A stretch of DNA of 64,000 nucleotides. Origin: Perna viridis (taxonomy: Eukaryota). The stretch spans positions 16,182,001 to 16,246,000 of the forward strand of contig CM074511.1 of the NCBI GenBank assembly GCA_037379345.1, given 5' to 3'. This document shows, piece by piece, positions 9,980 through 57,185 of this stretch; position 1 is the stretch's first letter; every line of letters starts with the position of its first letter. A model generated the notes under the pieces. The model saw only the letters and a program-made list of their open reading frames with translations. It was not told where the DNA came from and ran no database searches. A program made the translations under genes and the position numbers.

Positions 9980-10201
9980 TCAATGCAGAGGAATGTTATT
10001 GCACGTTGTAAAGATGTATATTATTTTTATTATGAATAAAGAATGTGACATAGATACGGCAGAGTTTGACCCGTCACTGGCATTGTCATTCAGATTATGT
10101 CGCACTTGAATTTTATGCTGAATACTGTCTGTAATAATATTCTCTCTGTCAAGTTCTGTGGTTATCTGCACGACCGTTAATGCTTCCGTTGAAGTTGATA
10201 C
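9980..10201 (-). CDS. Gene A exon 6: S/T-rich stalk plus GPI-type C-terminal signal (VSTSTEALTVV...ASDGSNSAVSMSHSLFIIKIIYIFTTCNNIPLH*)
   Basis: tttttttcag acceptor, phase 0, 222 nt to TGA. Small-residue cluster followed by a hydrophobic tail. The spliced CDS totals 888 nt = 295 aa. Confidence 0.8.
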   Translation of the reverse strand, partial: VSTSTEALTVVQITTELDRENIITDSIQHKIQVRHNLNDNASDGSNSAVSMSHSLFIIKIIYIFTTCNNIPLH

Positions 10202-12008
10202 CTGAAAAAAAAGTAGAAAATATCCAACGAAAATTTCAATATGCATTTACCCTTCATTTTTACCTTTTTAAACCGAACGCGGTAAATCATATGGTATAGC
10301 CAGTATTTTCACAAAAAGGAGGCATTCCAAAACAAGTCAAAATTGGCACAATACAGAAATAAAGATTCCTATCACTGCTCCACGACTTGAAGGCGCTTCC
10401 CGGAAAGATACCTAAATGTTTATTTCTTCAGGCCGAGACTGGGAATGAGTGTTAGACAAGTGATTCAAATATAACTGATGAAAACGTTCCCATGGTATAT
10501 GGAGTGAACACGATAGTTGTAATATGTTATTACCAAACTAGAAAGACATTAATTAAAATAATTGACACGAAATCTGAAATATATATTTATTAAAGTCTCG
10601 CGCTATTGTTAAATTTCTCAGATTAGAAACGTTTGCCAAATTGAACGCTTTTTTGTCTACACATTTTAGTATTACGAAATAATGCTCTCATTTTGAGTGA
10701 AACGAGTACGCATGAGAAGACATAAATAAAAGCATCAGACAAGTTATTGTTATCAAAGACAACAGGAAGCCAAAGGAAAAACTATTTTTTTCTGCCATAT
10801 GTTGTATAACTTTGTGTGAATCTGGAATTATCAAATATTATCTAGAACAAATCACAAAACACATTGCAAATTGTTTTAACAACAGTGATGATGTGGTGTA
10901 TAATAATGCCATCTTCACCTGGATACTGAGTGAAGAATTGTCACTTAAGACTACCCACATCGATAAATGAATTTGTGCTCGCTGTTTTATGATAGAAAAC
11001 GCATAAAAAGCCGTTTTTGATATCGATGCCGAAATCACGACTCAGTTCATTTTGTAAACTTTTACACGAAGTGGATGTACACTTTCACTTTAAAGAAAAC
11101 AATGAGATTAAAGTCCAAATTGTTATATATCAAACACTTATCTAGAAAAAAAAGAATGCTATTGTTTTTATCCGGTTTTAATCATCAAAAACACAAGCAC
11201 AAAAACCCTTGATAATAAGGACTGAATGTAACTGGTGTTTTTCTGTCCGAATCATGAAATAGTCACTTAAAAGAAGACACGTTTTTCAAGAAAGACAAGA
11301 TCAAGTATAGAGACACAGTAAAATAACACCGATACTAACAAGAAATGCACGAACCGGGTTATATTTCACTGAATATTTTAACAGTCGGACCTACATGGCA
11401 GTGATTGTGTGAAAAAAAAACAATATGAAGGGTTTTACGACATGAGAAAGGAGATAAAATTTATTCCCCGATGGAGCTATAAAGTTTCACGTCGGTGATA
11501 TGTTCTTGATGCATGACAAAATGAGGCTTTTTGATTCATTCTTCAAGTGTTTAATTGGAATGCCATTTAGTTAACATATGAAGAGCAAAATACATTATGC
11601 AATTATTTGAAATGATACATCGCTTTTAAGATAATGCAGTTGAACTTAAAACATCATGTACTTGCATACTTTCCAATAATTTCAGTTCAAGTTATTCTTG
11701 TAAAGACGGCAAAATTAGAAACGAGGAAAATTAAAGGTATTTACTTATTATTTAGCATCTTTCAGCTACTATGAGTCTACGAAATAAAGACAACTTCCAG
11801 ATACCTTTTCAGGGCCGATAACCAGACTCATACTAGTAGTTAAAGAATACCACAACCGTCGAGAGAAGACAAATCAGTTAAATTTCAAATTCCTGCTTTG
11901 AATTGAATCGCTAAAAAGTTATTGATACAATCTCAGTTTATGTTTCTGTGTGTGTGTGTGTAATGCAGCAGCAGAAAAGTAGAGTCGTTTAATATGTGCA
12001 ATACTTAC

Positions 12009-12153
12009 AAATATCTGAGCGTCGCGATTGATGTCACAATCGCTGCTCCGTCTGATCATTGGTTTTACTAAGACCGGTACCAATTTAGCGGCCTCGTTGT
12101 CACATCTTCTCTCAATATTTGCCCTAATACAGTTTAAAGTTAATCTGAAATTT
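12009..12153 (-). CDS. Gene A exon 5 (NFRLTLNCIRANIERRCDNEAAKLVPVLVKPMIRRSSDCDINRDAQIF)
   Basis: ttttacag acceptor, gtaagt donor, phase 2->0. Homologous to gene B exon 5 (CI..NI...C..EA..LV, RS.DCD). Confidence 0.9.
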
Positions 12154-12492
12154 CTGTAAAATCAATAAAAAGAAAAATGTTTCAAGTTCATGAATTTATG
12201 TGAATGCAAATCAGGTTTGAAGACTTCTTCGACTTATATGAAGACTTATTGTCTCTGCAACCGTGAAGATAACTTAACTATTGATGTACGCCACCGTCAG
12301 CATTAATGGACTTTAGATTTCATTTGTTGAACATTAATAAGCCGATTTCCAACCTTGAAACGTACCAGGTGTATTTTGTTCAGCATCTATTAATATCCTT
12401 TAAGAAAATATATTTTTCACAAACGATCATTTGTTCGAAGTCGGAGATAACGAGAAGAACGTACTTAAAATTGCTTTTATGTTAAGGATCAA

Positions 12493-12600
12493 GGCATCGT
12501 TTCACAAACCACTCGTAAGACTTGCGTACACGCAAATCTTTAACAAACCAAAGGTACCCACCTGTATACAAGTCTTACTTAAGCTTTGTTATACGATGCC
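12493..12600. mobile_element. ~105-bp MITE, family shared with 35131-35233
   Basis: TIRs GGCATCGTTTCACAAA / TTTGTTATACGATGCC. The interior aligns in reverse orientation with the 35131 copy. Confidence 0.7.
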
Positions 12601-12965
12601 AAATATACTATGTTACTTCCGGGTTGTTACATGCACAATGAAGCTCAGTAACGATGAAAACCAAACATCAACGTTGTGTTTTATTATCGTGTTTTGCCAA
12701 CGCCTCTGTCGTTTGAATTAAACGGCTTGCCAAATACCAACAAGAAAGCAAAACAAAATATTAAGAATAATAAATATTGACCTCTGTTCAATATATTTTT
12801 TCAATTTAGATATCTCAGATTAGTGTGGACAATAATTGTGCAGGCAATTGTGAATACAAATTGGAACATAAAGATTAAACAGTTATTACAACTTTCATAT
12901 TTTTGGAACATGTGAATTTCGCGTATGAAACATTTCAATTGACAAGATACATAATATATACGTGC

Positions 12966-13095
12966 CTACAAAGCTGAGACAAAGAATAGTCATCAAATCT
13001 TGACATGAGTCTGACAGATGAATTCATATTGTCCTCAAAACATCTCTCGGAATTACTCCGAGACATCAGAAAACATGTCATATGTCTTGCATATA
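12966..13095 (-). CDS. Gene A exon 4 (VYARHMTCFLMSRSNSERCFEDNMNSSVRLMSRFDDYSLSQLCR)
   Basis: tttcag acceptor. 130 nt, the same length as gene B exon 4, when the GC donor AG|gcacgt is used. VYAR and SERCFE shared with the paralogue. Confidence 0.9.
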
Positions 13096-13458
13096 CTGAA
13101 ATGAGAAAAAAAAACAAAGCTATTAATTCATTCAGATGCATTAATTTCGAAATTGCTTGTCTGATATTGGTCTTTAAATCTTCAAAATGATTTGAGTTTA
13201 TATTGATATGGAAGATTTATTCATTGTCTGATTCTTATTTCTCTTAGATAATCTCAAGTCGAGGAAGTTGGACGACTTGTCTCTCTTATATAATCTGGAT
13301 CACCTCAAGTAGTCGATATCATGACAGTAAATAAGATCACAGGAGTTCCCAGCTGACCGGTATATCATATTTACGGTATAATAATGTAGCATGTACTTCC
13401 TACACGTTTATATTTCATGGATAAGTTACACTTTGTATTATTAAATCTTATGTTTGTA

Positions 13459-37845: not shown

Positions 37846-37975
37846 CTACAAAACCGGTTTAAAGGTTTATTAATAACATCATCAAGTTCTGAAACAGCTA
37901 GTTTCATTTTTGTTTCAAAACATCGTTCAGAGTATTGTCCATGCTGTATAAAACAGTTATTATTTCTTGCATATA
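37846..37975 (-). CDS. Gene B exon 4 (VYARNNNCFIQHGQYSERCFETKMKLAVSELDDVINKPLNRFCS)
   Basis: tttttcag acceptor, AG|gtaagt donor, 130 nt, phase 1->2. Confidence 0.9.
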
Positions 37976-38033
37976 CTGAAAAAATAAAGCAAATCATTAT
38001 TGTTATTAAAAAAAAATAAGACACGATGTAGTT

Positions 38034-38470
38034 ACTGAAGAGTACAACATACCGAAGAGCACATCAGACCAAAGAGTATACCAGACCGAAATGGACAACA
38101 GACCAAAGCGCACACCAGACCGAAGACGTAGAGCAGACCGAAGAGTACATCAGACCAAAAAGTACAACAGACCAAAGAGTGCAACTGACCAAAGAGAACA
38201 TTACACCTAAAAGCACACAGACTGAAGAACAAATCAGACCGATTAGTACATCAGACAAAAGAGCACATCTGGCCGAAGAGCACCTCAGACCGAACAGTAC
38301 ACCAGATCAAAGGGCATACAAGACCGAAGATTACACCTGACCGTAGAATAAATCAGATCAAAGAGCACATCAGATAGTTGAGTACATGAGACCGAAGAGC
38401 ACATCAGATAGTTGAGTACATCACACCGAAGAGCACATCAGACTAGAGTACACCATACCAAAGAGTACAT
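38034..38470. repeat. 18-bp minisatellite (~24 copies) in gene B intron 3
   Basis: Consensus cagaccgaagagcacat(c), degenerate. It accounts for the spurious ORFs at 38032-38258. Confidence 0.9.
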
Positions 38471-39800
38471 AACTTAAGGTATTTCAGGCGATTTTAAATC
38501 AGCGTTATTTGCTTGTTTTTGTTTTTCTTTTGCAAGAAATATAGAAAAATTGCGTTTATATATAAATATCTATGTCCTAAATGCCCGCTATACTTCACGA
38601 TATAATATATAAAGTACAGAAATTGTAATATTAAGTTCATTTTATTTTTTGTTTGTTTTATAAACGTGAATCCTGAATATGTTTTCGAACATTTAACTGG
38701 TCTTTGATATTACCATGTAACCTTTGTGGCATATTAGCATTCTGCCATCAAATTACTGTGTGTTTTGGCCATTACAAAGACAGGTCATGTTTTTATTGGA
38801 AAGAAAAGCATAGCTCTTTTGCCATATCAAACAAAATGAAGGTTCAGACATTCTTTTCAATGATGACAAAAACCACCGACTCTGGAGATGTCAGACTGCT
38901 AAATAATTCTGTTAAAGCTTTTTCAAAGTATATTCTCGAATGGTTTGCCAGATTGACTTTCTCAAAAAGGCATTTTTTGTTTTTTTTTTACGTATATGAC
39001 ATGTGTGTATGTGTATGTGTATGTGTTTATGCGAATTCCAAAGTTGTTTCCCATATGTCATTACATACTTATGCTTGCTTTGTTGTTCTGTGATATGTTT
39101 ATGCATATTTTGATTTATTAAAGAATCTTTGGCTTCAAATTAGCAAAAATGTCGTTTTGATAAGATTTAAGTTTGAAAAATGACGTAAATCAGCAAAAAA
39201 CAGAGATAGCAATGTTTTAAATTTTAGAATCTTTTTTCATTTTAACCTTGATGTTTTCAGAATGGAGTACGTCATGATTAGCTTTTACAAAGAACACGAA
39301 GTTGTTAATTCCATCTTTTCTTTTTCTGTCAAGTACTTCCGCTTTGCTCCATTAATCTCTAAAGTTAAAGTAAACAACACGATACCTGTCCTCTTGTATT
39401 CACATAAACGTTTTCTTTGCACTTAGAATAAAATTAAACATAACAAGATTTGCATTTTTGCAGGACATATAAACTAAGTAAAGATTTATTGCCAGACTCT
39501 CTTACTGTTATCACAATGATTTGATTGCGTTTACGAAATATTTGTCCGGGTTTTAAGCGACCCCCAAAGGTTTCCGATGACAATGAAATGATTATGTAAT
39601 GCACTTTTATGTCAGCAAGTTGTAAGCAAATGTCATTGTAACAGTGACAGCAATAAGTTACAGAATTTAATTTTAAATAGCTTTCGTGGGGCAACATGTT
39701 TCTGTCCATTTTTTGTCTTGAAATATTGTCGATTTATGGTCCAGTTATGCTAACTACATGTATGCATTGACATAGCAGTTGTGCTAATTTGTTATCTTAC

Positions 39801-39946
39801 CATCTAACATATTGTCATCTTTGCATAATTCAGAGGAATCGGTTTGTCCTGAATGTAATGTTACTAAGGCAACGTCTATCTGACTCTTTCTTCCTGGGCA
39901 TTGACCATGAAAATCTCGGATGCATTTGAACGCTGCTTTATAGGAT
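39801..39946 (-). CDS. Gene B exon 3 (SYKAAFKCIRDFHGQCPGRKSQIDVALVTLHSGQTDSSELCKDDNMLD)
   Basis: ttttacag acceptor, G|gtaaga donor, phase 2->1. Paralogous to gene A exon 3. Confidence 0.9.
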
Positions 39947-41926
39947 CTGTAAAATATAAAAGCAAGCACATGTTTTCAAATACATGTAACGAGTTTAGTG
40001 TAACTAGTGGACAGTCGTAAGATGCAAAAGTTATGCACAAAGACTTGGTGGTTTTGAAATAACATTCACTGTACTACTTAGCTGTATTATCTCCGCAACA
40101 TCAAAAGACTGTTACAGTATTGTGGACATTTTGATCTAAGCCCCTCCCCTTGTCTCGAAAAAAGAAGGAAAAAAATTCAGTCATATTCTCAATGACCAGG
40201 GATATTTTATCCCAAATCATGACACTTTAATTTACAGTTTGGTGCTCTTTTCCCTGCAAAGTTCATTAAAAACATCTTTCAGCAGGCATAGCTGATATGG
40301 GGAAGATTATAGGCTGGTGGGTCCTGTCTTCTAGCTATTCCTTTCTATAGGAAATAGTTGTTTTTTTTTAATCTTGTCTAGTGCACTGTATAATTTTATT
40401 GTGATTATAAGCTGACATTTTAAAAGTTTTTTTTTCTGCCATGGCACTTGATATGGATCTATTAGGTGGTAAACCTACATTTAACCGAACCATACATAAA
40501 ATTCATTATGAAGAAGAAGATTTCTTTATCGATTATTTAAACATATTTCTTTATAATATGGTTGTTTTTATTCCATGATAGGTACAACATGTTGTGCCTA
40601 CTTGTTACCATGGAAACTACAAGAGCCTAATACTTAAGGTTGCAAAATGTCCTCATGCAGTTCATTTTGGAAATGATTTTACTGTTAAATTGGCCAACAT
40701 GGATTTTTCTAACATCTCCGATTAACAACTGTTTGATTTCACTTCCTTCATAATTCTTAACTCGTTTATAAATATTTTACAAAACGGTTATGATGTCAAA
40801 ATGACGCTTAAAGGAATAAAGTGAGATGTCTGACATACTTTAATAGAACCAGTAATTGATATTTGATCGAGAGAAAAATATTCGTACTCTAAATCATAAC
40901 TCAATTCTATAATGACATATGAGCTTAAAGTATGTTAACGATCATAATTGGCAGATAAATTGCTATATTCATGTTTTATCGCTTCGATTCCAATGAAAAA
41001 CGACTGTTACCAGATATGTTAATTGTCATATTTAATAAGTCTGTTTTGAACGGCTATGAAATAGACTGTCACAATTTGTTAATTTGAGGTATTTTTATCA
41101 TTTAAGAAACCTTAGATAAATTCAAGTGTATTAATTATTTCGTTTTTAAGGTCTTCGATAACAAATTATGATCTCTGCTATGTCAAATTGTTTTGTATTG
41201 AAAACACAAAATGTATTTTTCCGCCCAATTTTTTTTTTCAGCGGCAGATTAAGGCCAATCATGTTTATGTGAATAGGAAAATAATTTCCATGTCGCCAAG
41301 AGGGGTGTAATTACACCGTTTAATACCCTTTATCCACAAGTTAGATATAAACTAAAATCCCCCGTCGATATTTGAAAGAACCCATTTAAAAACGCCCTGG
41401 CAAATCTTCAATTTATGAAATTTATTAATGTTTTAAGTAGTTAAATACAAGTCGGTTGGGAGCATCCTACACTCATGGGATGTAGTTTGTTAGCAACCAG
41501 TGCCGTGCTTTTTCATAAAAATTTGATAGAAATTTAATAATTTCTGTTCTTAGCCAAAGTTATAAAACGGAAGTTATGATAAGTTATGATATCAGTCAAG
41601 AATAAGCCTGTAGGGTTTTGATGGGGCTGTAATTTCCTTCTTTGAAATCAACTTGGCATTACTACATTTACATGTAAATACATGTAACTTCTTTTGAATC
41701 AAATTTGACAAATGGTAATGGTTCTCTATCAAGGTTTCAACATTTAGACTCTTTCAATTTTGTATGTGTTATTGTTTAGGTGTTTTTCTGAAAAATCCAT
41801 TTTGATTTGTTTAATTACAGATGTCTCTAAATAGAGTAAATATACTACTCATTCAACATTTCAATATTCATACAGGACTCAATTAACAAATCTGTCTCAT
41901 ATCCAAATAACAGCCACCATACTTAC

Positions 41927-42080
41927 GCGCATAAACGTCGAACGTTTTCCACGTCGACACCAGAAAAGAAAGTTCTATCAGTCTTGTGTATATGGTCTAG
42001 CCACATGTGGTATTGATTAAAGCACTCGTTGGTGTAACTATGGACATCTACTGAACAGGAAGAGTAACATGTCTCTATAA
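41927..42080 (-). CDS. Gene B exon 2 (IETCYSSCSVDVHSYTNECFNQYHMWLDHIHKTDRTFFSGVDVENVRRLCA)
   Basis: gtttacag acceptor, gtaagt donor, phase 1->2. Paralogous to gene A exon 2. Confidence 0.9.
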
Positions 42081-44996
42081 CTGTAAACAAAAACAGAATT
42101 TTATAAACTTTGAAATATCTGATTGGAAGAGTACAAATGCACCCGGTGTGAAATTTTAGTTCTACCGTGGTTGGAATGTTAATATATAATTTTATCGATA
42201 GTAAACTTGCATGGAATTAGCAGATGTATCATTAGTTTATCAAATGTCCAGACTAGAACATGTTTGCTGAAAAAAAAGATGCAAGCATTTGGCAAGTTTC
42301 CTATTAACGATATAATAACAAAGATACTTGCATTGAGTGGCAAGATTTTTCTAAATGATAGTCGTACAAAAAAAAAAGCTGAGTTTAATATTTAAGCAAC
42401 TCAACGATACATGAACTAAACTAAGCCTAAATCGTATGCAAAAAGGCATTAGTTTGCATGTATCTGTTACAGAGACCACAAAGGATTGGGTTAAATATCA
42501 CAGCGTTATACCGCCTTAAAGAAAATAAGACCAGGAAATACTGTTGCAGCATCGCTTGCTCGAATTAATAAAGACGGATGTTAAGTTGTGCACAAGATGT
42601 TTATACACATGTACATTTAGTCTTTCACAACGTAAATGATTGGACACCCATGGGATTGTTCTAAGGATGAATCAGTGTAAGAAGGTGTTAAATATGTACC
42701 TCGGTCTGTAATCCAACTCAATACGAACTACATATTAACTAGTGTCGTAAAATGTTATGCTTTTTATCCCCTTCTCAAATCTCATTTACGACATTATTTA
42801 TGAGGTCACTGAAAAAAGGATATCTCAAGCGTGTAATTATACTGGCACCACGGTGTAAGTCGGTGTAATTAATACACTGTTGAAGTGAAACCAGGAGTTC
42901 AAGTAATGTTGAAAGCTTTTTCACGAGAGTTATACATCAGTAATGTCAGCAATTTTCATTTAAAAAAATCCGTTTTTATAACTTATAGTTAGCCAAATGA
43001 TTAACGGATTGTACGATATCCTTAAGGTTATTTAAGTTCAGGGCATAGTCCACCAAATCCTCTGCTTGTTTTCGGAGGCTTTAAGTTTCGAAATTTTAAG
43101 ATTTAAAATGTAAGTTGACTACACCATTCTTGGAACTGAATTCAGTTGAGAAATTTCTGTCCTCTGACACGGTAAAATTACCGACATGTATTTAGTAAAA
43201 ATGTATGGAGGTACATTATATGAGTAAGCAAATGTGTTGTCGTTTGATAAAGACACGTCTTGTATTCCATAAATTAATACATGCAGCTTTTTTCGCCAAC
43301 AACGTCGTGTGTGTTATGATATTACGACTTTCATAAACATTCTCCAAGAATGACAACACAAGAAAACATATTAGCATTAATTAATGTTGTTTTTGTTTTT
43401 AATTAGTCACATATTCTTTATGGCTGTAATAAGTCACTTATTAAAATTCTCTCGTCAAACTTTTGACAGTTGGTCTGGTACAGTGTGTTTCCACAACCAG
43501 ACAATGATCAACATAAGTCAAATTAAACATCAGGCAGTTGGTTAGGCATGTTTTAACAACATTATAATGAACTACCTGCTAAATATCAGAAAGTTCACAA
43601 TTGGTTATGACAATGCTCAAGAAGTAAGTAGTCTTACTAAATAGCAAGTAAATTGTAAACAAGACAAACAATTATATCTACAGTAACCATCCCCACTAGA
43701 TATCAGGCAGTTTAAAACAACTGGTTACGAATAAGTGATTTCGTGATTAAAAAATGTGTCGAAATTGTTATTCATCCTTGTAGCCTCTTTCAAATCTGAT
43801 GAATGAACGGAATAATATAGAGAAAAGGTCGAGTATCTTATTTTTTTTTATATCTTGGCGACGTCTGTAACGAGAAAGATTTAATTCTATTTACATCGAG
43901 TTTTTGATAAGCCAATTTTACTGCTTTTAATTCGAATGAAAAATCATTACTTTAAAACTACATTTACTTTTAAAGCAAAAATAATCGAGATTTAACGTTA
44001 AAATAGAAAATGCCATTTTTGATAGACACGATTTTATAACAGTTGATATTTGCTTTGATTTCATTTCAATGCTTTTGCACGAGGACAACCACGCTTTGCA
44101 CAAGCTAAACAGCTGTGCTGTAGTACTAAGTATAATTTACCAGTACAGTTTTGATAAACTGTAAAAACTAACGTTCTTGGAACATAAAGCTCGTGTTCAA
44201 TAGATATAACCGTTTGATGTAATAGGACAGTATATATATTAATGATGATTTAAATAAATTCTATTTCTATAGAAAATATTAGTAATTATAATTCTGTTGT
44301 AATTCAAGACTAGAAACTCGAGCGAGTTTTATGTAACAATGACTCAAAATTTTCTTCAAAAATTACATAATATACATTTGCAGAAAATGTAGGTTCAACA
44401 AGTAAATACGATCTAGTAAACTACTATAATGCCAAATGTTTTTCTCTGATCTCTTCGCCTCCGAGACAGATCTTTTTCCTATAAAACATCACTTCTAAGC
44501 AAAGTTCCATTAACATTCCCTATAAACTATCTCTAAGGGGCTTTAAAATGCATTTTATTTAATTAAATGCAAAATATCTCTGGGATACGGCGTAACTCGA
44601 TGTAATTATATTTGATAACATGTAAACAAAACATTGACTCTTAAGAAAGCAAACTACATGCATGTGTATACAATTAATATAGTTTTATCGTCATGACATA
44701 TACTATGAATGAAAACAAAACTTCGAACGATTATGTTTAGGATGAAAACATTCTATTCACTAATAGCGCTATGAAGTTTTTGTATACACCAACATATTAT
44801 CTGGGTCAAAGGATTGGATTCAGGATGGGTAGAGGTACAACGTGCATATAATATTTATTAATTTTATTTATTATTATTATCATTATCATCATAATTATTA
44901 TCCTGTAACTAGGCTTCTACTGTACACATAAATTATGTCAAATAACGCGAAGCTTTATTCCTCCACTGCATAATAACGTCTCCTGGTTACTTTTTT

Positions 44997-45066
44997 CGTC
45001 TGAATACAGCCGAAATGTTGCTGCTCGGACGTTAAACCCCAACAAACAAACAAACAAACAAACAAA
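44997..45066 (+). repeat. SINE 3'-tail fragment with (CAAA)n tail
   Basis: ctgaatacagccgaaatgttgctgctcggacgttaaaccccaa(caaa)n. Homologous to 31523-31585. Confidence 0.65.
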
Positions 45067-45914
45067 TACTTTTTCAGTTATGAGCAAAGTCAAAACAGGA
45101 AACAGATGACCAGTTTATAGTTGCACACGCCAACTGCTGCACTCAAATTACTGCTAAAAAATCAACTTTTTAGGGCAAATTTCGCATGTTTTATTTAGAA
45201 AATGGGGTTGCATGATACAAACAAATCAAATAAATTTAATATTTTCCGGCAATATACATGTATTGCATATCTATTCGAATCGCCGTTTAAAGAATCTAAT
45301 TAAAAACGAAACAATGCAAGTTCTAGTCTACACCGACAGTAATAGGAATGAAGCCAGTTTTTTTTTTAATTTTATTTATTGTATTCGATAAAAACTATTT
45401 TTTCTATCTTCTCAGAAATCATTTATGAGCAAACTGATCGTGATGCACGGGCAATAAAACCTGTTATAAAATTAATAAATTACTGCAAATCAGTGTTAAG
45501 ACGGGTGAACATTTGTTTCCACACGTCTCGTTACAGTGTTTGGCCATCTATAACTCCCAACTGTCAAGAATGTTACACCTGCCGCGAGTCGGGCGCACAG
45601 TAAATCATTGCTAAGAATTTTCAGTATTCGCCATTCTTGCTTCCTTGGAAGCTGAAAGAATTTAGAAATCTCCATTACACAAAGATTTGCCTTCATAAAG
45701 TGCACACTGCATGAAATGACTTTCCACAAGTTTACTAGTTTATGATGCTAATAAAAATAGAACAATTACACAAGATTCGTATAAAGCAACATCGTACAAA
45801 ATATGCAGATATAATCAAATGACCCTTACCAAGAAACTAGTTGAGCAAAACTAGAAAAAAATACTAACTAGATTAAGTCAACTTACTTTGTCTAAGATAC
45901 TGGTCTATCCTTTA

Positions 45915-46132
45915 CAGTGAAACCCGTCTGAACAGAATCTCTTAGTGATTGGAGGAATTGTTCGGTTTAAGAAGGTGTACGTTTAATATAGGTTCTAAAT
46001 GTACTTGAATTTCGAAAGAATTCTGGGCGGTGTTCGTTTTAAATAGGTTCAAAATGTACTTGAATTTCGGAAGAATTGTGGTTTGGACAAGTCATCAGTT
46101 TATTCAGGGTTCGGTTTATACAAGTTCAACTA
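45915..46132. mobile_element. Tc1/mariner-type MITE remnant
   Basis: TA|CAGTGAAACC start, degenerate inverted right end, internal ~46-bp duplication (ataggttc.aaatgtacttgaatttcg.aagaatt). Confidence 0.5.
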
Positions 46133-47489
46133 ACAGACGCTTAAGTAAGTACGTAAAGTACGTAAAGCAGTTGGAATGGACAACTAGAATTGCCATTGCA
46201 AGCAAAAGCGAATGTCGCACCGGTAACATTTTCAGTTTTGATTTTTTTTTTAAATACATAGTAATGAAGTTCGGTATAATAGTTACATTTGTTGAACGTT
46301 TTGTTATTAGTCAACAGTAGTTTTTAACATGTTTAATATTCCACAGACTAAATTGCTTTCTGGTCTTTATTCATGCATTATGCACAGTATCAACACTTTG
46401 TTTATTTTGGCTTAGCTTATAGGATCATGAGTTCTCAATTTTTTGTCTATAGCCCATGGACACAAGCAGTTCATTTCGTTTAAATCGTAAATTATTTTGT
46501 AGATCACAAAAGATTCGTACATCAAATCGATTCTACAAGTTTATTTTTGTATCAAAACATTCCGTTCATTTTCATTTCAAACGATTACATTATGTGCATG
46601 AAATAGGCAATTTCCCTCCTCCTTAACCCAAGTTCAAATTTTTAAAAGGCGGTGAGATTTCATGGCCTATGTCAATATTTATATTGTAGAAAATCAAACT
46701 AATTTACCGTACGCCAACTGACATTGAGTAGTATTACAAGAGAGATAGATTACTAAAGAAAAATAACTATTCGATATGTTTTTATACAACAAATGACATA
46801 AAAGCTCTGCGATCGAAAGGTGGACCAAGGGAATTTTCAATTTTCTCGGAGATTCGTGCATTTAAAAAACGGAATATTTAAATTTCCAAGTCTAAAGTAA
46901 ACTTTATGATTAAGTTTTCTAAATAACTTTTACTTAATGGACAAAATGAAAGGGATCGTGGTCGTCTTTAATCCCCCTGTCAATGTTGGCATGTCTGTGA
47001 TGCAGACGACTTCTGTTAAAGGTGTACATAATGTCAAAACAAAGCAGGAATGACTTAAAACGGTCGGTCAATAGACGAATCCTCATAAATTGTAGTATGT
47101 GTGTAGGCTTTTATATTTTAAATGTGAAACTGAAAGTGGAAAGCATACAGCGTGTGATATGGAATCCTGGATGTTTATGCAAATCTAGTTCAATACAACT
47201 TTCTCTTTCAAGTCAAATCTTGGAAAGACATGGAATTTTGTTCCTTCCCTTTTTTCTTAATATATTTCCGGTTTATTCGATAATTCATTTTAAAGAAAAA
47301 AAACATTTTGTCATATGATCGTCTTTCTCATTTATCAATTTACAGGGCATTATTTTAGATCAACTATCAATTGTAATATATCAGCTGAGGAGAGAAGAGG
47401 GTAGTATCTACCAACAAATCCTGTAATATTTCTTACTGACAATGAACTTTTCTTAGCTTTACCATATTCATCGTTTTTCGGCTCTTTTT

Positions 47490-47703
47490 AGGAGGTAGAC
47501 CTAGAGTAAGGGACATAACTCTCAAAATCAGTGATATGATTGTATCATATTTAATTTCACCAAAGCCTATCAAACTTTTATTTGAAACAGAATGAAATCA
47601 ATCCAAGTTACTTTGATGCTTAGATGAGATTGATGTAAAATGCTGAATACAAACGTTCCAATGATTTGTAAGAGTTGTGTCCCTTATCTTATGTATACCT
47701 CCT
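47490..47703. mobile_element. Kolobok-like MITE, longer copy
   Basis: ~40-bp imperfect TIRs starting AGGAGGTA, TTAA-like flanks (ttta / ttaa). Homologous to 27972-28136. Confidence 0.75.
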
Positions 47704-48159
47704 TAATTGTTATTCAGTAATTTACATACTCTCGTGAAATCTAATGGATGAAAAGATCGCCCCATAGACTGTGTCTTCAGTATTTAATCAGAAGTTTGGC
47801 AACTAGAGTTGTCCTGGTGATACTGGGAGTAGATTAAATGACAATGAAACTTATCAATAAGATATTTCCTATTTCGAATACAAAAAAAACTTCCACAAGC
47901 GCAGCATAATACAACCACCGCCATTTGAACTCTAATCATTTCAAGCCAGTGTGGACACAATACTGTTTTTGACATACTTAAACATAAGGACTAATAGTTC
48001 ATTATGAGCTCAACAACTCATTTAGATACAATATTGCACAATATAATTTTGAAATTCAATTAAGTACAAAGTTCTGCCTCTGGGTTCTTTCGTGGATTAC
48101 TTTTTACCTGATTATCTCAAAAACAATAAATGACGGAGTAAATTTGCTGAGCTCATGGA

Positions 48160-48322
48160 AAGGCAGGGATTTTCATAAGAAATCCAATTAAAAAACAATC
48201 CAAATCGCACTAAAATGAAAAAGTAGATTTTGGGGGGGGAAAGGCAGGGATTTTCATAAGAAATCCAATTAAAAAAAAATCCAAATCGCATTAAAATGAA
48301 AAAAAAGTAGATTTTTGGGGGC
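48160..48322. repeat. ~80-bp tandem duplication
   Basis: aaggcagggattttcataagaaatccaattaaaaaa.aatccaaatcgca.taaaatgaaaaa..gtagattttggggg occurs twice. Confidence 0.85.
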
Positions 48323-51300
48323 TTGGCACCTTGCAACTTGAAAACCAGAAGAGATATCTGAAATCTAATTGAAAAATGCAGGCAGGCGCTTTCTTGAGGA
48401 ATCTAATACAATTTTTTTTCAAAATCAGACTAGAAATAAAAATGTATTTTTTAGGGTGTGGACTCACTTTGACCCCCATAGACTGACAGTGCTAATTGCC
48501 ATTTAATCTCTGTTGAATATACTTAAAACAGAATTTCACACGAAACAATTTTTTTAAAAAATTCAAAATTGAATGAGAAGTAAATCATCTAAATTAATTT
48601 TGAATAAACATATTTTAATAATTTTTCACCATTTTTTACAAAACGGTAGGGACCGGTGACCCCAATTTAGATACCAAACTTCCTGTAGCCGCAGGACTTC
48701 CTATAGTAACAATATATGAAAATTTCATGACATTCGGTTCACTAAAACTTGAAATATGGCACGGAAAAGTAAAAAATAACAACGACGACCACGACATCAT
48801 AACGTAATACATTACATTGCAGGGTTTTGGCGTTAAACATCATTTTATAAAATACTTATACAAAAAAAAAAGGAAGTCAAAAACTAAATGTGAAAGAAAA
48901 TCGCTAACATACTGCGTTTGCTTCAGCTTCTTACGAAGAAATCTATGTAGACAAGACCCAATAATACAGATTTTACGAAAACTGTAGAAACATTCTAGAC
49001 ATTTTCATACTTCATATTTAATAAGCTGTGAGATGTACAGATAACAGTTACTATTGTCTACGTTATTTTACTTTTTGAAAGAACATTTTATTTTTAAGCC
49101 AATATATGCCCAGGGACTATTAAATGGACAATGTGGTGTAATAACGAAGTAACAGAGACAAGGAGGCGTTTACGGGTCATTTAAGTTCAGAATTACAATA
49201 GTGTATTGGTACAACTAAGCGTTTGGACATTTATTGAGATATGTTACCACATGACTAATATCTGACGTTTATCTATGTTATAAATTGCCCAAGAAACAGA
49301 TGGACGAATTTCGTGTCACAAGCCGCTTTCACGGCAGTTTATTGCTGGTTTCTGAGACATGTAGCTTAAGTGCAAATATTAAAATGTAAGACATGTTCAC
49401 AGTAAGATGATCCAAATGGACAAGACAAGATAAGGAAATATTACATATGGTGTGGAAAGAGAGGGCATTCATTGCACTGCCATCCCAACAGAATATCTGT
49501 ATTTTAAGTTCCGTCATTTTTTAATGCGTTGCTCAATTAATAATATCACAAAACTTCAGCTAAATTTACTAGACAACATTTACTCCTAGTTTTAAGAATA
49601 TTTGACTGGACTTCAAAACAAACCAAGATGTTTAAACATTTGCTAATAATTTCTATATAAAAATAAATTCTGGTCTTTATAATGTATCTCTTCCCCTGGC
49701 CTGTATAGTATGTGCAACACTGAATAATTGCGATTTGAATTTCAAGTCGTATTAACTTGAAATGTACACTCTTTCTGTCTATAGAACTCGTTAGTCCTTA
49801 TGGACGTTAAAATAGGATTGTAACAAGTCAATTTATGTTGGTAGAAAATATTTACATTTTTGTTCCAATTATCGGTCATTCAACAATAGTTAGCATTTTT
49901 ATTTATGCTCTTTGTCATACAAGTTACTTAAATGACAAGAAGATATTACATGAAACCCTAAACCTGAAACTCAATACACTGCATAGGTATGCTAAATTAT
50001 TCCTTTAATTGACATGGTGTCTTACTCTATAATTTTCTACCATTGTTTTCGTGATATCAACTTTAAACTGTCAAATAAAAGTGTGATATATCACAGCATA
50101 ATGCAGATATCATACTGTTTGCCGTTTTCTAATTTTACAATGCAAACAAATGATAACTAATTTACAAATATACATGTCAGCGTGACATTTGAACTAGGTT
50201 TAGCACCGACATAAAAATTTCAAGTATATTTTCATTCTCCTTTCTCTGGTTGCAATGCAGCCTTTCAGTGTGTTGGTTAGGTCTCCATGTATAACATTAA
50301 ATATTTTATCCATTTTCGGCCTCTTGTCAATGAAAGTTTTGTCTTAAATACCTTTTTACTAAGTACATGTAAGCGTGACGCAACGATTATATAAAGGTCG
50401 TGTTTTTTTTCGGATTTACCATTGGAAAAGAGTGATTAGCTCTATTTGGCAGATTAATATATTTGACATTTTTTCAAAGTGTAGATATGGATTTTTTTCA
50501 TTTGATACAAGTCTAATTAAAAGTTAATTATAAGAAACAACTCTCTGGTTGAGAAATATAACTAATATTAACTAAATAGTCCCCATTTTACAAACTTTTC
50601 TCTTTCAAAAAACTACCATGTCCACAAGAACATGCCATCATATAGATACCGAGTGGTAAAGTTGAATGTATCAACCTATCGCAACGGTTTTGTTTTCATC
50701 GTAAATCCCGCTAATATTTAACAATTGTAATCCATATATGTCAGGTTTAATCTTCAGCCACAATCGATATGTGCTACCCCCCCTGGCGGTATTTGTCTGA
50801 ATTTAGCTAGAATAATAAAAATGTCACAAACTTCGTAACACAAATTTTCTTCTTTTTTTCAGTTTGAATTTTTTATTTGCTGTCATTTCTCTGTATGTGG
50901 TCATGGTCTGTCTAATCAGTCATCATTGAAAAAAATAAAAGTAGACCTTATGTTTGTTGAAATCTAGCAAAGCCTCTTTAAAATACAGGTATTATGACAC
51001 AAAACAAACACTTAATATATTTCAATATTTACTTTCTAATATTACATGCTAGTAATATGAGGAACAAACAATAAAATTCTTAATCACTTCATGACCGCTG
51101 CCTACTCCAGACCTCTTGATTTTATAAGATTATCGGTATCGATCATGTTAATCGCCACTCAAATGATTTTTAAGCTGATCATAATAAAAATCTCAATTTC
51201 ACATTATCCGCTGTATTTAAATTAAATCAGGCATTTATGGACAACGATAAGAAAAGTTGAAGTAAAGGGTTAGCGGGCAGTTTAATGTAATGTGTGTATG

Positions 51301-51871
51301 TTAGTAAACGATAAAATAGCCCAGATATCTTTAGATCTGAAAGAATGTTTACATTATTTGCTCTTTTGAATACATTTACGGCTTAAGACTATAAACACCG
51401 TCTGGATATAGATACTTAAACGGTGTACCTTGATATAGGCTAGTACTAAATAGCAAGTAACATCAACTCGACAAATAATTACAACCCATAAACTCCGTTA
51501 TTTCTTTCCCATTTTCGGTCTCAACAACATTGCACAGTCGCTCGGCTGAAGATGAGAAGGGTGGGTTAGAAATCATCATGACTTGGCATCCAACCGTCAG
51601 CATCAAGCTGTATATATTAGGTTATTGACACGTAATGAGACACCACGCAACAACGCAAGCCTTTTATATGCATTATTACTTTAGATACATGTACAACGTC
51701 CTCACGGTACTCAGGTACTGAGGATACATGTACTTCTGAATATCATTATTGAACGGAACTTCAACTGTAATGGAAGTCTTTTAAGTTTTAAGATATCTAA
51801 CCAGGATTAATAATCAACCGAATGATGTTTGATTGATTTCCTTGTATCTTGTGTTTGACAATTTTTTCTAA

Positions 51872-51944
51872 CTACATGTAAGTCAGTAGAGACTTGCCCA
51901 TGACTACCTACATGTAAGTCAGTAGAGACTTGCCCATGACTACC
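51872..51944. repeat. 36-bp tandem duplication
   Basis: ctacatgtaagtcagtagagacttgcccatgactac x2, exact. Confidence 0.85.
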
Positions 51945-54900
51945 AATTTTGAACTGGTGTGTATGAAAATTTTTTTAACCTACACCAATTCAATCATAGG
52001 TTCTACCTTAAACTTAGTTGCATGTACCAAAAGTGAATAAATGGAATTATCACCACATCTTTAACGTGAGTACCACGTGGACCTACAGTATGATATACAA
52101 GAAATATTTGCCCCGCTTAAGACTCGGGAGAAATCATCATCTACTTCTCCCTTAAGATATACTCCATTTAGATGACAGCACTCCCTAATGCACAAATCAT
52201 AAAAATTATAATTTCCAGCACGATTTCATGTTCAGCAAAATATTACATAAACTGGCATGTGTCTATCAGGCTATTTAGCAATCACCAGTTCAATTAAACA
52301 GTTTATCTACAATTATTGAGATAATTTAGACAGAGCCAGGATGCTGCACAATTTTATTTGACAGGCATCAGATTGTACGGCGATGCTAATTCGCCAGAGG
52401 CTTAAAGATGAAATGAATAAAATGGCTTTTGCTTATATAAACAACCACGCAGATGTTTTGGGAACATATGACTTCAGATCTTTTGAAGGATCTCACTATA
52501 AAGCAGATCACTCAAGAAGTTTAGTTTGATTAGATTTCTAAGTGGAAAAGATGCTTGCCCTGGCACCAAAAGAGATTCCTTAGTTTGTAATAAGCTTCTT
52601 CCTGACTATCCTACAACTTCTCTTGGACTCTCCTACCACCGTATAACAAGCTTTGTCCCATGTCCCATGTTCTTAACTTATGTGTTGCTACATTTTTAGG
52701 TAGATTTCACTTGTAGTCTCCATTTGATTGTATAATTTCACACGACTATCGAGTTTATTTTTGTTTTTTCTTCGTGTGTCAGTTTTAAAACAAATTAAAT
52801 ACGAGACAGCAACAAGAGCTTCTTCTCAATGAGATGACAGAACTATTTAATATAGTTATACTACCTCGCTTTTCGGAGCTCGCTAATTTTGAATATTATT
52901 TTTCAATTTTTGGGGTCAAAATTATTTTTGTTCCGAACATTACATTAATCAAAAATAATTTTGAAAATAATGTTAGGTTGTAATTCGGATAAGCCCGCTA
53001 ACTCACAAATGACAATTATTTCTCCGAAATTTTAGATATTACAGATGTTGCTAATGAAAAAAATGCTCTAGATAAATCGAAAGTAATCCATTCAGCGTTC
53101 TTGTCGAGATCAATGGCTAAATTTCACCAGGGTTTACCATTTATAGATATGAACAAACACAAACACGCGAGGCCAGTCTAGTCATATTGACTTGCCATCT
53201 ATCACATACGGCCACGACAAGTCTGAAACCGCAGGCACAGAAAAGGCTTAACGAGACGATTTACAATTTTATGAGCATCTTAATATAAACCAAACGTAAA
53301 CACAGGACTCTAACAGTACTTTATCTAATAATCTTCGCAATGATTTATAAATGGAGAGCGGAAAGGAGAAGACTGTATGTTTACAGACCATCGTTTAACG
53401 AGAATCCAATCTAAACCTATACAAATACATTACAATAAGACTTCAAACGGTCTCTATGACATCCTTATCGCAGAAAATGTTGAGAACAGGTAAAAAATGA
53501 ACAGGTGAGAAATGGAAATTGATAAAAAGTTAAATATTGACTTCGTGTTGTATTTGTACCAGGTGGATCGAGTCGGGGAAAGGTATAGAAAGGAACGTGC
53601 ATCCTTTCTTATAATCACAAACTCTTCCATTTTAATAGAAATTCATAATTGTCACATCATTCAACAATACCCATGATTTAGAAAGCTTATCATACGTTTG
53701 TTTTGTTGAACAAAACAAATCTGCTCAAAATCGATATTCTTTGCTTCATTTTGCTTTATACATAAAAAAAACTATTAATCCTGCTTTGCGCATACATGTA
53801 TGACCTCTTCAGAAGACGATCAGTACTCCGTTATTTCCCGTTATTAAATAATCGGTATTGCCTAAATTACAGTTCTGTTTATAGGTGCATTGTCGTGCAA
53901 AGACTTCAAAGGCCTCTAAAAATAAGTACCAACCCGAATTTGGTTGTCAAAAAGAAGAGCTGCCGTGTTAAAATTTAAAGAAAAAACTGTCAGAAAATTA
54001 ACCACTTTGTAATTAATCAACAAAGTTAAAATTCCATTAAAAACTACTTTCTGGAATAAGTTTACCTAACGGAAGTGTAAGATTAGAATTGTCGACATTA
54101 AAGTTTCAAATTGACATATTTTTCATCCTGTCAAAAAATTGGATCAAGTGTTGTAATTAATCTTGAATGTGCTTCATAAGTATTTTCATTATTAATGAAA
54201 CGTCTTGGAATGTTTAAAGTGACTGATAAACTCGAATTGAATATAAACCGTCTTCCGATGTATTGCTGTAGATTGACAAACGACCTTTCCAAAAGAGCCC
54301 GCGGGCAACATCATAACTTTATATCTTCTTGTTATCTGCTGTATATATTCCATTCAGAACACACTAAAACCCGGACACTTAAAATCCTATACTTTTGTTT
54401 GAAAAAATAAGCTTATATAAAGAAGCAATTAGGTGGCTAATATAGGATATGAACAATCATTAATCCCTGTTTTTTTCTTGTCATTTCTGATCTTAATGTT
54501 TATATTAACTATACAAGTGTGACTTCTTATTTTAATTTCTGCCTTCTAATAAAAATCATATTGTTGATCCAAAAGCAGGCAATTACTATTCATAGCTTCA
54601 AAATTATTCTGTGATAATATTGCAATATTGCATTATATATTTTCACAAATCTACATTAAAATTTAAGATTAGCTGTATGCATTTTTCACTAATCGGTTTT
54701 AAAACAAATGTTTAATTTATGAAATCTAAAAATCCATTTATTTTAATCACCAGGCAAAGTTTCCTGAAGTTTTTCTATCAGTTTCGTAAACATTTATATA
54801 TTAAGCTATCTCTCATTTATACATAGTTCGATAAGATAGCAAACTAGAAAATAGTTTTGTGGGAACTATTTGATACAAGTTAAAATACATCAACCACTTC

Positions 54901-57112
54901 GAGGTCTGATCCTACTTTCAACGTGATATTTTTAAGCGGTCAATAACCTTTTCACTGAGTCGTCATTTTTGGTTTTACATTTAGCAAATATAATATCCTT
55001 AAATTATTTTATTCCAAACTGATTATACAATCCAAATACACAAATGTAGAATGGTTATCTCTCTGACTTGGCGCGCCGTATGTTGATGACCAGTTTAGAT
55101 TCGATCCAATTTTTTTCTCGGAATCAAAACTTACTACTGCATGCTTCTACCCCATCATGTCTTATAGTGGCATATCAATAAAGAATGAAGATCTATTTGT
55201 CTAGCACAAATAAATTGATCTTGGAATGATCAGTCATCCAAAGTAAAGGCATTAATAATTAATTAATTTTCCGGTGCAGATTTCAGAGTGATTAACTCCC
55301 AATAAAGTTTTCAGACCATTTACACCTAAGAACAAATCATCAAATTTCTCCCATAATCCTGATTAATATTTCAGGATACATTTCGAAGCAGAGACGGCAC
55401 TGGATTCATTTGCATATCCTCAAATGACCCGGAAGTATTACCGAGTGTTACTGGACAGAGGACAGGAAGGGCTATACTACATATCATTTCCGTACGACTA
55501 ACGCTAAGTGACGTGTTGACATGACTGATGACCATTTTTCGGACAATCGAGCAAACCATATATAATTATCTTAGAAAGTGTCACGGTAATAAAAAAAAGA
55601 CGAATACGTTTTCAAAAGAAATAAACGAGCATTTTTTCCCATTCTTTAAAAAGAAATTTGGTTTTTGCGGTATCACATTTCAAGTGATCATGCAAAACTC
55701 TGTTAAACTTACGATTGGTTTATACCTCGTAGCAACAAATCATTTTCTGTTTGACTGGACACTAGACTGACATTATCATTGGACAGTAGAAATGTAGGGA
55801 AAACAAATTAATCTAACAGATGACACGGTAATAAAAATCAAGCCTTGTCCCATGTCTGACTATCCTTAAGGTTTATTAGTGTCCATATCTAGCTGTCCAT
55901 TAGAATTATTGCTGAATTAATAATACACCAAAGCTGTTGGAAAATATAACCGCGCGATTTAGAGTTGGGAATATATGCAATTGATCTGATATAAAGGATA
56001 TGTATATTGAAGTCCCAAAGTCGTCTAATCAATGAGTATTATTCACGGAATTCCATATAGATGATAAAAACGATAAGAGAAATTGTAAAAATGGAATATA
56101 AATCGTGGCCTCTGACGAATATCATACTAGAAATACGGTGCCAGGATGGATAAAAAAGGAGGATAGCAATACACATAACGCTAATTAAAGCAACAAATCA
56201 AATTAAAACGCATCAACTGAATTTAATAACAACGTCCCTGTTGTTCACTATTCTAAAACATTCAATACCATACCAAAACAAACGTGAATGTATAAAATCC
56301 AAATGTTTACAATAAGAGAATGAATCAATGATAATTAATTGAACATATTGGTTACTTTTCGCAGAATAGAAATGAATTAAGGAACGTCATCAAATGGAAA
56401 TATATCATTAAATTAACTTAACACTACTTTAAAATCACCAAACTGGTGATGCCTGAAGTGATCAAAATGTAACTTTCCCAAATATGACGACAAATTCAAG
56501 TTTTTCACTAAATGACAAAATAGTTACTGTAATTTCCCCAAGCATAACATTTCAGTAGCCCATCAATCATAACTAATTATTACTGATAGGTATAAATGTA
56601 TACTTGACAGATTAACATGAACGAATCTAAAATCCTCAAACTGCAACCTTAATGTGAATAAAGAATAAATGCAATTCTCTTTTTTATCATAAAACTTAAC
56701 GTATAACAAGTTTGCGAGAGAAAAAAACTATGTTACTATCGCTTTCTTGATGGGTTCTTTCTATTTATGTATAGTTACCCCATACATGTACAGGAATGAC
56801 AATTTGGTGAAGAGAAGGAATCCGAGTGTTTTGGGGGATTCGTTTGAGTATGTTAGTATTTGCAATTGATCTTAGAAAAATCCTTTTAATATTGAGTCAA
56901 CAAAATGGCTTTAAATGAAAGCATTTTTATTGAAAGTTAATTTGCCCTTTCTTGCATGTAGTAATGCACAGTATTTACAAAAAGCTTTGTAAGTGTTAAA
57001 CAATACACTGCTATATCTGCGTAAGTCAGAATCTTGCAATTATGTAGTAAAATCCGAATGCAAATACTCGAAAAATGAATACAGTATTAATAGAAAAAAT
57101 GTCAATACTCAC

Positions 57113-57185
57113 ATAAAAATAGCAATACAAAATTCCAGAAAACAAAATGTTTCAATTGTATACGAATTGGAAGTGAAGAAGACAT
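57113..57185 (-). CDS. Gene B exon 1: signal peptide (MSSSLPIRIQLKHFVFWNFVLLFL)
   Basis: ATG at 57185, 73 nt, donor gtgagt. Phase 1 joins exon 2 to give ...FVLLFLFIETCYS. It was the only strong-donor, phase-compatible signal-peptide exon I found upstream of 42080, and implies a ~15-kb intron. Confidence 0.7.

What the first reader, a model, noticed from the sequence alone, without database searches (positions are those of the whole stretch)
9980..57185. Hidden tandem pair of signal-peptide, double 6-Cys-module, GPI-type surface proteins with neuritin/RGM-N-like cysteine spacing
Seen: two minus-strand genes invisible in the ORF track assemble cleanly from splice sites, with identical intron phases (1,2,1,2,0). 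All 12 mature Cys are conserved. Module 1 is C-x10-C-x30-C-x8-C-x7-C-x24/25-C, then a 14-aa linker, then module 2 C-x10-C-x23-C-x8-C-x8-C-x21-C. The paralogues are only about one-third identical over the core by hand alignment (shared GVDVE, LCKDD, VYAR, SERCFE, RSxDCD), so this is an old, maintained duplication. Knowledge: vertebrate neuritin/CPG15 is a GPI-anchored protein with one C-x9-C-x24-C-x8-C-x7-C-x27-C module ending LFELC (here LSDLC/SSELC). C-x8-C-x7-C also marks the BMP-binding RGM N-terminal helical bundle, and invertebrate DUF19/DUF1397-type proteins have similar Cys frames. Inference: an uncharacterised invertebrate family of two-domain neuritin-like surface ligands or co-receptors.
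Basis: partly seen in the sequence, partly recalled or inferred. Interest (0 to 1): 0.8.

Follow-up and report, generated by a model that had tools for sequence, protein, structure and literature searches.

The report
Tandem DUF19/DUF1397-type surface glycoprotein genes
Two neighbouring spliced genes in this mussel-like bivalve encode small cysteine-rich, probably GPI-anchored surface proteins; they are real, but they belong to a named and unstudied invertebrate family (DUF19/DUF1397), so the neuritin/RGM link is only a weak resemblance.

Summary
Two minus-strand paralogues, gene B (57185..32536) and gene A (15290..9980 plus an unfound first exon), assemble in frame with intron phases 1,2,1,2,0. 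Their cysteine spacing is 10,30,8,7,24/25 | 14 | 10,23,8,8,21, and they are 34% identical over the core.

Stranded RNA reads confirm the A4-A5-A6 splices, including a GC-AG intron. Full-length orthologues (60% and 54% identity) support the other exons.

The pair lies in the same order and orientation in Mytilus californianus. A family profile finds only these eight core exons in the 723-Mb genome.

The family occurs in bivalves, a chiton, gastropods and a brachiopod. Every named member is 'uncharacterized' or, once, 'DUF19 domain-containing'.

Pfam places the family in the DUF19/DUF1397/CPG4 group: 28, 21 and 18 of 41 members match, and one match exceeds the curated cut-off. RGM_N gives only short sub-threshold hits on the C-x8-C-x7/8-C segment (13 of 41). 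NRN1 matches 3 of 41.

AlphaFold2 models are confident and all-helical. No solved fold stands out, RGM included.

The two 6-Cys modules are homologous (hhalign 94.6%). GPI anchoring is inferred from C-terminal tails only.

Verdict: new members of a known, uncharacterised kind, of modest interest. The same scan had already noted the internal duplication on this window.

The parts
57113..57185 (-). Gene B exon 1: ATG plus a hydrophobic signal-type N-terminus (24 codons + 1 nt), donor TAT|gtgagt, phase 1
   Evidence: Scan for ATG, hydrophobic stretch and phase-1 donor. It joins in frame. The B model aligns with the Mytilus orthologue P0009 from residue 9 on.
41927..42080 (-). Gene B exon 2: first half of module 1 (C-x10-C-x30-C, GVDVE motif)
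   Evidence: matched by the family profile in the own-genome search.
39801..39946 (-). Gene B exon 3: second half of module 1 (C-x7-C-x24-C, LCKDD)
37846..37975 (-). Gene B exon 4: first half of module 2 (VYAR, SERCFE)
36095..36233 (-). Gene B exon 5: second half of module 2 (C-x8-C-x21-C, RSKDCD)
32536..32667 (-). Gene B exon 6: Ser/Thr/Asn-rich stalk, small-residue stretch, C-terminal hydrophobic tail and stop
   Evidence: Scan for a terminal exon. In frame. The tail aligns with the Mytilus orthologue to its last residue.
15134..15290 (-). Gene A exon 2: first half of module 1. Acceptor 15290 is preferred over 15281 because it matches gene B's N-terminal register.
   Evidence: RNA depth 1.9 in run X22 only. 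Profile match.
13673..13821 (-). Gene A exon 3: second half of module 1
   Evidence: No read evidence. Supported by gap-free alignment with orthologues across both junctions.
12966..13095 (-). Gene A exon 4: first half of module 2; ends at a GC donor (TTGTAG|gcacgt)
   Evidence: Joint 12153|12966 with ends CT..GC on the + strand in 8 stranded RNA reads. The M. californianus orthologue has GT at this site.
12009..12153 (-). Gene A exon 5: second half of module 2
   Evidence: Both flanking joints are seen in RNA reads.
9980..10201 (-). Gene A exon 6: stalk, GPI-type tail and stop. The 3' UTR runs on below 9750.
   Evidence: Joint 10201|12009 in 4 reads and one X4 contig; depth continues to 9750.
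22756..22807 (-). Unverified candidate for gene A exon 1 (17 codons + 1 nt, hydrophobic, donor CAT|gtgaca, phase 1)
   Evidence: Heuristic scan only. No read or homology support. The implied 7.5-kb intron resembles the 7.8-kb first intron of the M. californianus orthologue.

Best explanation
These are two tandem paralogous protein-coding genes of a lophotrochozoan family. The family is a distant branch of the DUF19/DUF1397/CPG4 group of secreted 12-cysteine proteins. Gene B has a hydrophobic signal-type N-terminus; gene A's first exon, and so its signal peptide, was not found. Then comes a ~175-residue all-helical ectodomain built from two homologous 6-Cys helical-bundle modules, presumably with three disulfides each. 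Each module is encoded by two exons, so the domain arose by internal duplication. A disordered Ser/Thr/Asn-rich stalk with N-glycosylation sequons follows. The protein ends in a short hydrophobic tail preceded by small residues, which is the form of a GPI-attachment signal. Inferred mechanism: the protein enters the secretory pathway, is disulfide-locked and glycosylated, and is transferred to a GPI anchor. It is then displayed on the outer leaflet as a rigid helical binding module on a flexible stalk. The likely role is an extracellular binding or adhesion partner that could be shed by anchor cleavage. The gene models, paralogy, internal duplication, family placement and helical fold are shown. 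The anchor, the disulfide pairing and any ligand are inferred.
For: Exons join in frame with matching phases. Spliced stranded RNA reads support A4-A5-A6. The full-length models align with independent database proteins: A at 60% identity to P0001 over 256 aa, and B at 54% to the Mytilus protein P0009 over 250 aa. The 177-aa core aligns without gaps to Pinctada, Solemya and Ylistrum members. In M. californianus the same B-then-A pair lies on one strand, 18 kb apart, with six coding exons each. Only these eight core exons match the family profile in the whole genome. Of 41 members, DUF19 matches 28, DUF1397 matches 21 and CPG4 matches 18. The DUF19 and DUF1397 alignments span both modules, and P0015 scores 30.4 bits against a cut-off of 25.7. 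PF07165 is precomputed for 4 of 13 relatives. UniRef names the Elysia member 'DUF19 domain-containing protein'. Atlas neighbours are CPG4- and DUF1397-type clusters scoring 0.89-0.92. Module 1 against module 2 gives hhalign probability 94.6%, E 7e-8, with all six Cys in register. AlphaFold2 models of the A-type and B-type orthologues have pLDDT 82.6 and 85.2, with the core mostly above 90, all helical and a disordered stalk. In 25 of 43 sequences a hydrophobic stretch ends within 8 residues of the C-terminus, usually after N/S/G-rich segments.
Against: The window's own joined proteins were never scanned against Pfam or folded, so placement rests on orthologues. The A-type orthologues score below the Pfam cut-offs (20.7-21 bits), and the B-type orthologue matches neither DUF19 nor DUF1397 directly. 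It is linked to them only through its clear homology to A-type proteins. No signal-peptide or GPI predictor was available. Gene B's tail ends in a conserved KHS(V/I)RL, which is unusual for a GPI signal. Gene A's first exon was not found. RNA depth was low, about 2-4 reads per exon, and no tissue information was available. No function is known for DUF19 or DUF1397.
Confidence: 0.8

Rival explanations
1. One reading: the 6-Cys module is a true homologue of the neuritin (NRN1) and RGM N-terminal domains. On this view the proteins act as neuritin-like neuronal surface ligands or BMP/receptor co-factors.
For: RGM_N is the fourth most frequent Pfam match, in 13 of 41 members at E<=10 (best 0.0063), whereas unrelated families match 1-2 members. 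The hits always fall on the C-x8-C-x7/8-C segment of module 1 or module 2. NRN1 matches 3 of 41, best E 0.03. A neuritin-1-like cluster appears at rank 16 in the Atlas with score 0.77. Each module superposes on small helical bundles. The proteins share a GPI-type tail with neuritin and RGM.
Confidence: 0.2
2. The proteins are soluble secreted or matrix glycoproteins, or proteoglycan cores, like the insect 27-kDa hemolymph glycoprotein (DUF1397) or nematode CPG-4. The C-terminal hydrophobic stretch would then be a propeptide or weak membrane tether, not a GPI signal.
For: The closest Pfam families are known from secreted material: centipede venom, insect peritrophic matrix and hemolymph, and large families of secreted nematode proteins. 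The stalks are Ser/Gly/Asn-rich. Several family members lack a convincing tail.
Against: Most members, including both window proteins and their Mytilus orthologues, keep a terminal hydrophobic stretch behind small residues. A purely soluble protein would have no reason to keep it.
Confidence: 0.2
3. The genes are annotation artefacts or decaying pseudogenes assembled by chance from splice-like sites.
For: RNA depth is low. Exon A3 and all of gene B have no read support in the single stretch that could be laid.
Against: There are no frame breaks. All 12 Cys are intact. Orthologues with identical exon structure occur in Mytilus, and the family spans three phyla. Spliced reads exist for gene A.
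Confidence: 0.02

Closest known systems
Pfam DUF19 (PF01579), the nematode secreted 12-cysteine domain
   Same: A single extracellular unit with 12 conserved cysteines. The alignments span both modules (for example profile positions 1-157 on P0022, P0002 and P0029). It matches 28 of 41 members. One gastropod member already carries the name.
   Different: Every score shown is below the curated cut-off of 23.2 bits (highest shown 22.8). The mollusc proteins add a glycosylated stalk and a GPI-type tail. There are two copies per genome here, against about 51 genes in C. elegans.
Pfam DUF1397 (PF07165), the insect 27-kDa hemolymph glycoprotein family
   Same: Near full-length alignments (profile 32-207 of 207) in 21 of 41 members. 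P0015 is above the cut-off and Pecten P0056 is at 25.5 against 25.7. Both groups are secreted glycoproteins.
   Different: The insect and centipede proteins are reported from soluble or secreted material. The window's A-type orthologue scores 20.7 bits and the B-type does not match.
CPG4 (PF15481), C. elegans chondroitin proteoglycan 4 domain
   Same: It matches 18 of 41 members, often with two stretches, one per module. A CPG4-named cluster is a top Atlas neighbour.
   Different: All scores are far below the cut-off of 32.7 bits. No glycosaminoglycan attachment has been shown.
Neuritin/CPG15 (PF15056) and the RGM N-terminal domain (PF06535)
   Same: A similar 6-Cys frame with the C-x8-C-x7-C core. 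They share a helical character and a GPI-type C-terminus. There are recurrent faint RGM_N hits.
   Different: These have one module, not two. No score is significant, no structural match was found, and there is no RGM C-terminal part.

Membership tests
DUF19 (PF01579) | About 130-160-residue extracellular domain with 12 conserved cysteines (stated from my own knowledge of the Pfam description) | tested here: met
   Twelve Cys are invariant in at least 42 of 43 sequences, including both window proteins. They span about 176 residues.
DUF19 (PF01579) | Score at or above the curated cut-off (23.2 bits) | tested here: inconclusive
   It matches 28 of 41 members at E<=10, best E 2.9e-5. The highest score shown is 22.8 bits (P0005), and the A-type orthologue scores 21.0. 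The window's own joined proteins could not be scanned.
DUF1397 (PF07165) | Score at or above the curated cut-off (25.7 bits) over most of the 207-position profile | tested here: inconclusive
   Met by P0015 (30.4 bits, profile 34-207). Four relatives carry a precomputed PF07165 hit. The A-type orthologues score 20.7 bits, and the B-type has no match.
Neuritin (PF15056) | Match to the NRN1 profile | tested here: not met
   It matches 3 of 41 members at E<=10, best 0.03, and none at E<=0.01. The genome-wide exon-level search found nothing.
Neuritin (PF15056) | Small protein with a single 6-Cys module followed by a GPI signal (architecture stated from my own knowledge) | tested here: not met
   Every member has two modules. 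The proteins are 250-320 aa long.
RGM (PF06535 plus the RGM C-terminal domain) | RGM_N match above the cut-off (24.2 bits) | tested here: not met
   The best individual score shown is 15.3 bits (E 0.025); the best E among the 41 members is 0.0063. Matches cover 24-49 residues on the C-x8-C-x7/8-C segment only.
RGM (PF06535 plus the RGM C-terminal domain) | C-terminal RGM domain with the autocleavage site (stated from my own knowledge) | tested here: not met
   No RGM C-terminal family appears in any Pfam scan. A short disordered stalk follows the Cys domain.
GPI-anchored proteins | N-terminal signal peptide plus a C-terminal small-residue site, a spacer and a terminal hydrophobic stretch | tested here: inconclusive
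   A hydropathy heuristic gives an N-terminal hydrophobic stretch in 32 of 43 sequences and a C-terminal one within 8 residues of the end in 25 of 43. Both window tails fit the pattern. No SignalP or NetGPI was available, and gene A's N-terminus is missing.

The most novel reading that the evidence does not exclude
The 12-Cys DUF19/DUF1397/CPG4 domain is an internal duplication of a 6-Cys helical-bundle module that shares ancestry with neuritin and the RGM N-domain. If so, these two-copy, GPI-type mollusc genes would be the nearest invertebrate counterparts of neuritin. They would also give three 'unknown function' families a testable role as membrane-tethered signalling ligands or co-receptors.
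Probability: 0.15. Interest if true: 0.6.

Novelty: new member of a known kind. Interest (0 to 1): 0.3.

Why it matters
The finding adds a clean, low-copy lophotrochozoan branch to a large group of secreted 12-cysteine proteins of unknown function (DUF19, DUF1397, CPG4). This branch appears to be conserved as a tandem pair. The exon structure and a profile comparison both show that the 12-Cys domain is a duplicated 6-Cys helical module. With only two copies per genome, the family is easier to study than the ~51-gene nematode family. The suggested tie to neuritin or RGM would be interesting for the origin of those vertebrate signalling proteins, but the evidence here does not establish it.

Tried and rejected
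- Pfam on the eight single exons gave nothing.
- Own-genome searches with PF07165, PF01579 and PF15056 gave only noise or nothing at exon level.
- A single-exon protein search of the genome found only itself.
- Gene A exon 1 was sought three ways: hydrophobic-ATG and donor scans, tblastn with orthologue N-termini, and motif regexes. None gave a convincing site.
- The word-indexed protein search with the family alignment reached no further than with one sequence.
- PDB sequence searches with one protein and with the profile found nothing.
- Foldseek against PDB had no match at E<=0.001.
- Literature searches linking neuritin, RGM, DUF19, DUF1397 or CPG4 found no functional or structural study of this domain. 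One preprint on a nematode Cys motif proved unrelated.
- QARS1 synteny was not confirmed: no recognisable flanking gene was seen among long ORFs or within 10 kb of the Mytilus genes.
Full report
**What is in the sequence**

The window is AT-rich (about 31-33% GC) eukaryotic DNA. One set is near 15.2, 13.7, 13.1 and 12.0 kb (gene A). The other is near 42.0, 39.8, 38.0 and 36.1 kb (gene B).

Extending each open frame to the nearest good splice sites gives exons with strong acceptors and donors. They join in frame.

- Gene B: 57185..57113, 42080..41927, 39946..39801, 37975..37846, 36233..36095, 32667..32536. This gives 257 aa.
- Gene A: 15290..15134, 13821..13673, 13095..12966, 12153..12009, 10201..9980. 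This gives 267 aa without its first exon.

Intron phases are 1,2,1,2,0 in both genes. Cysteine spacing is 10,30,8,7,24/25, then a 14-residue linker, then 10,23,8,8,21. A and B are 34.5% identical over 177 residues with one gap.

**Handling of the joined models**

The joined protein models were built only inside scripts, from the window file. They were compared only locally. They were not sent to Pfam, structure prediction or any database search. For those steps, single exons by reference or orthologue ids were used instead.

**Transcript evidence**

About 17 runs of the same organism hold roughly the exonic share (0.13-0.16) of the words of 9900-15400. Two raw stranded RNA runs and two contig sets were laid on 9750-15749.

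- Coverage with the first mate on the + strand, as expected for minus-strand RNA in most stranded libraries, falls on exons A6, A5 and A4. In run X22 it also falls on A2.
- Joint 12153|12966 was seen in 8 reads. Its ends, CT..GC on the + strand, show a GC-AG intron on the minus strand.
- Joint 10201|12009 was seen in 4 reads and one contig.
- Exon A3 had no clear coverage. Its bin is swamped by a repeat at 13452-13574.

**Homology support and family range**

A profile of exon 2 of both genes found 53 proteins among 1.84 billion representatives. Most are 250-320 aa and match near the N-terminus.

The A model aligns with P0001, a protein from a 940-nt transcript-type contig, at 60% identity over 256 aa. 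The B model aligns with P0009, a Mytilus protein, at 54% over 250 aa from residue 9 to the last residue. The 177-residue core of A aligns without gaps to the Pinctada, Solemya and Ylistrum proteins, so the exon joins are exact.

Named members come from these groups:

- Bivalves: Mytilus, Pinctada, Ostrea, Crassostrea, Saccostrea, Pecten, Mizuhopecten, Ylistrum and Solemya.
- A chiton: Liolophura.
- Gastropods: Haliotis, Nucella and Elysia.
- A brachiopod: Lingula.

All are labelled 'uncharacterized' or 'hypothetical', except the Elysia protein. UniRef calls that one 'DUF19 domain-containing protein'.

**Tandem pair and copy number**

In M. californianus the B-orthologue and A-orthologue lie on the same strand, 18 kb apart, B first as here. 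Each has six coding exons and a long first intron.

In the tree, window A groups with the Mytilus A-type protein and P0001. Next come oysters, then Pinctada, then scallops. Window B groups with the Mytilus B-type proteins at 100/100 support. That clade sits on a long branch outside the remaining mollusc clade.

The duplication therefore predates the split of this species from Mytilus. How much older it is remains unsure because of the long branch. The family profile matches only the eight core exons of A and B in the whole 723-Mb genome. This is a lower bound by the tool's own caveat.

**What family it is**

Single exons hit nothing in Pfam, but full-length family members do. Counts among 41 members at E<=10:

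| Pfam family | Members matched | Best E-value |
|---|---|---|
| DUF19 (PF01579) | 28 | 2.9e-5 |
| DUF1397 (PF07165) | 21 | 3.2e-7 |
| CPG4 (PF15481) | 18 | 8.8e-5 |
| RGM_N (PF06535) | 13 | 0.0063 |
| NRN1 (PF15056) | 3 | 0.03 |
| Unrelated families | 1-2 each | - |

The best DUF1397 match, P0015, scores 30.4 bits against a cut-off of 25.7. DUF19 and DUF1397 alignments cover both modules end to end. RGM_N alignments cover only 24-49 residues, always on the C-x8-C-x7/8-C segment of one module or the other.

The Atlas search gives CPG4- and DUF1397-type clusters as nearest neighbours, scoring 0.89-0.92. A neuritin-like cluster comes only at rank 16, scoring 0.77.

The proteins are thus a distant lophotrochozoan branch of the DUF19/DUF1397/CPG4 group. 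The A-type orthologues themselves stay just under the curated cut-offs. The B-type reaches these families only through its clear homology to A-type proteins.

**Architecture and fold**

All 12 cysteines are invariant in at least 42 of 43 sequences. Module 1 and module 2 profiles align with hhalign probability 94.6% and E 7e-8, with all six Cys in register.

AlphaFold2 models of the A-type orthologue P0001 (pLDDT 82.6) and the B-type orthologue P0070 (pLDDT 85.2) are all-helical. The core is mostly above 90. A disordered stalk and a terminal helix follow.

- Foldseek against PDB gives nothing at E<=0.001.
- No PDB sequence matches.

**Ends of the protein**

Gene B starts with a hydrophobic signal-type segment. 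Both genes end in N/S/G-rich stretches followed by a short hydrophobic tail close to the C-terminus. Most family members do the same. Sequons and Ser/Thr/Asn-rich stalks are present.

This is the form of a GPI-attachment signal, but no predictor was available. Gene B's conserved terminal KHS(V/I)RL is unusual for such a signal. Gene A's first exon was not located. The best heuristic candidate, 22807..22756, has no support beyond its shape.

**Mechanism and verdict**

The best-supported reading is a secreted, disulfide-locked, glycosylated helical ectodomain tethered by a GPI anchor, acting as an extracellular binding module. Gene structure, paralogy, internal duplication, family placement and helical fold are shown. 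The anchor, the disulfides and any ligand are inferred.

The neuritin/RGM idea survives only as a possible deep relationship at the level of the 6-Cys module. Membership of either family was tested and not met.

These are new members of a known but uncharacterised kind. Orthologues are already in public annotation. Interest is modest.

Noticed in passing
window 26898-27181 (-): A full-length 7SK RNA gene lies between gene B's last exon and gene A's exon 2. It matches Rfam RF00100 at 60.8 bits, E 2.8e-13, over model positions 1-331. It may sit inside gene A's unfound first intron.
   Followed up: no
window 13452-13574: A short repeat inside intron 3 of gene A has very high RNA depth on both strands in all four runs, up to about 26,000 summed contig depth. 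Most reads run on into unlike sequence, so it is an interspersed element transcribed elsewhere, not part of the gene. It hides read support for exon A3.
   Followed up: partly
window 12965-12966 (-): Intron 4 of gene A uses a GC donor (TTGTAG|gcacgt), confirmed by 8 spliced reads. Gene B and the M. californianus orthologue have GT at the same site.
   Followed up: yes
L003:32750-33150 and L003:35460-36120: In the M. californianus A-orthologue, short tandem copies of the start of exon 4 and of the end of exon 5 lie in the flanking introns. Several of the copies carry stops.
   Followed up: no
window 28480-29030 (-): A tandem-like run of ORFs encodes repeated ECGLLIYF-type peptides in the intergenic or intronic space between the two genes. 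It looks like a satellite or a transposon remnant.
   Followed up: no
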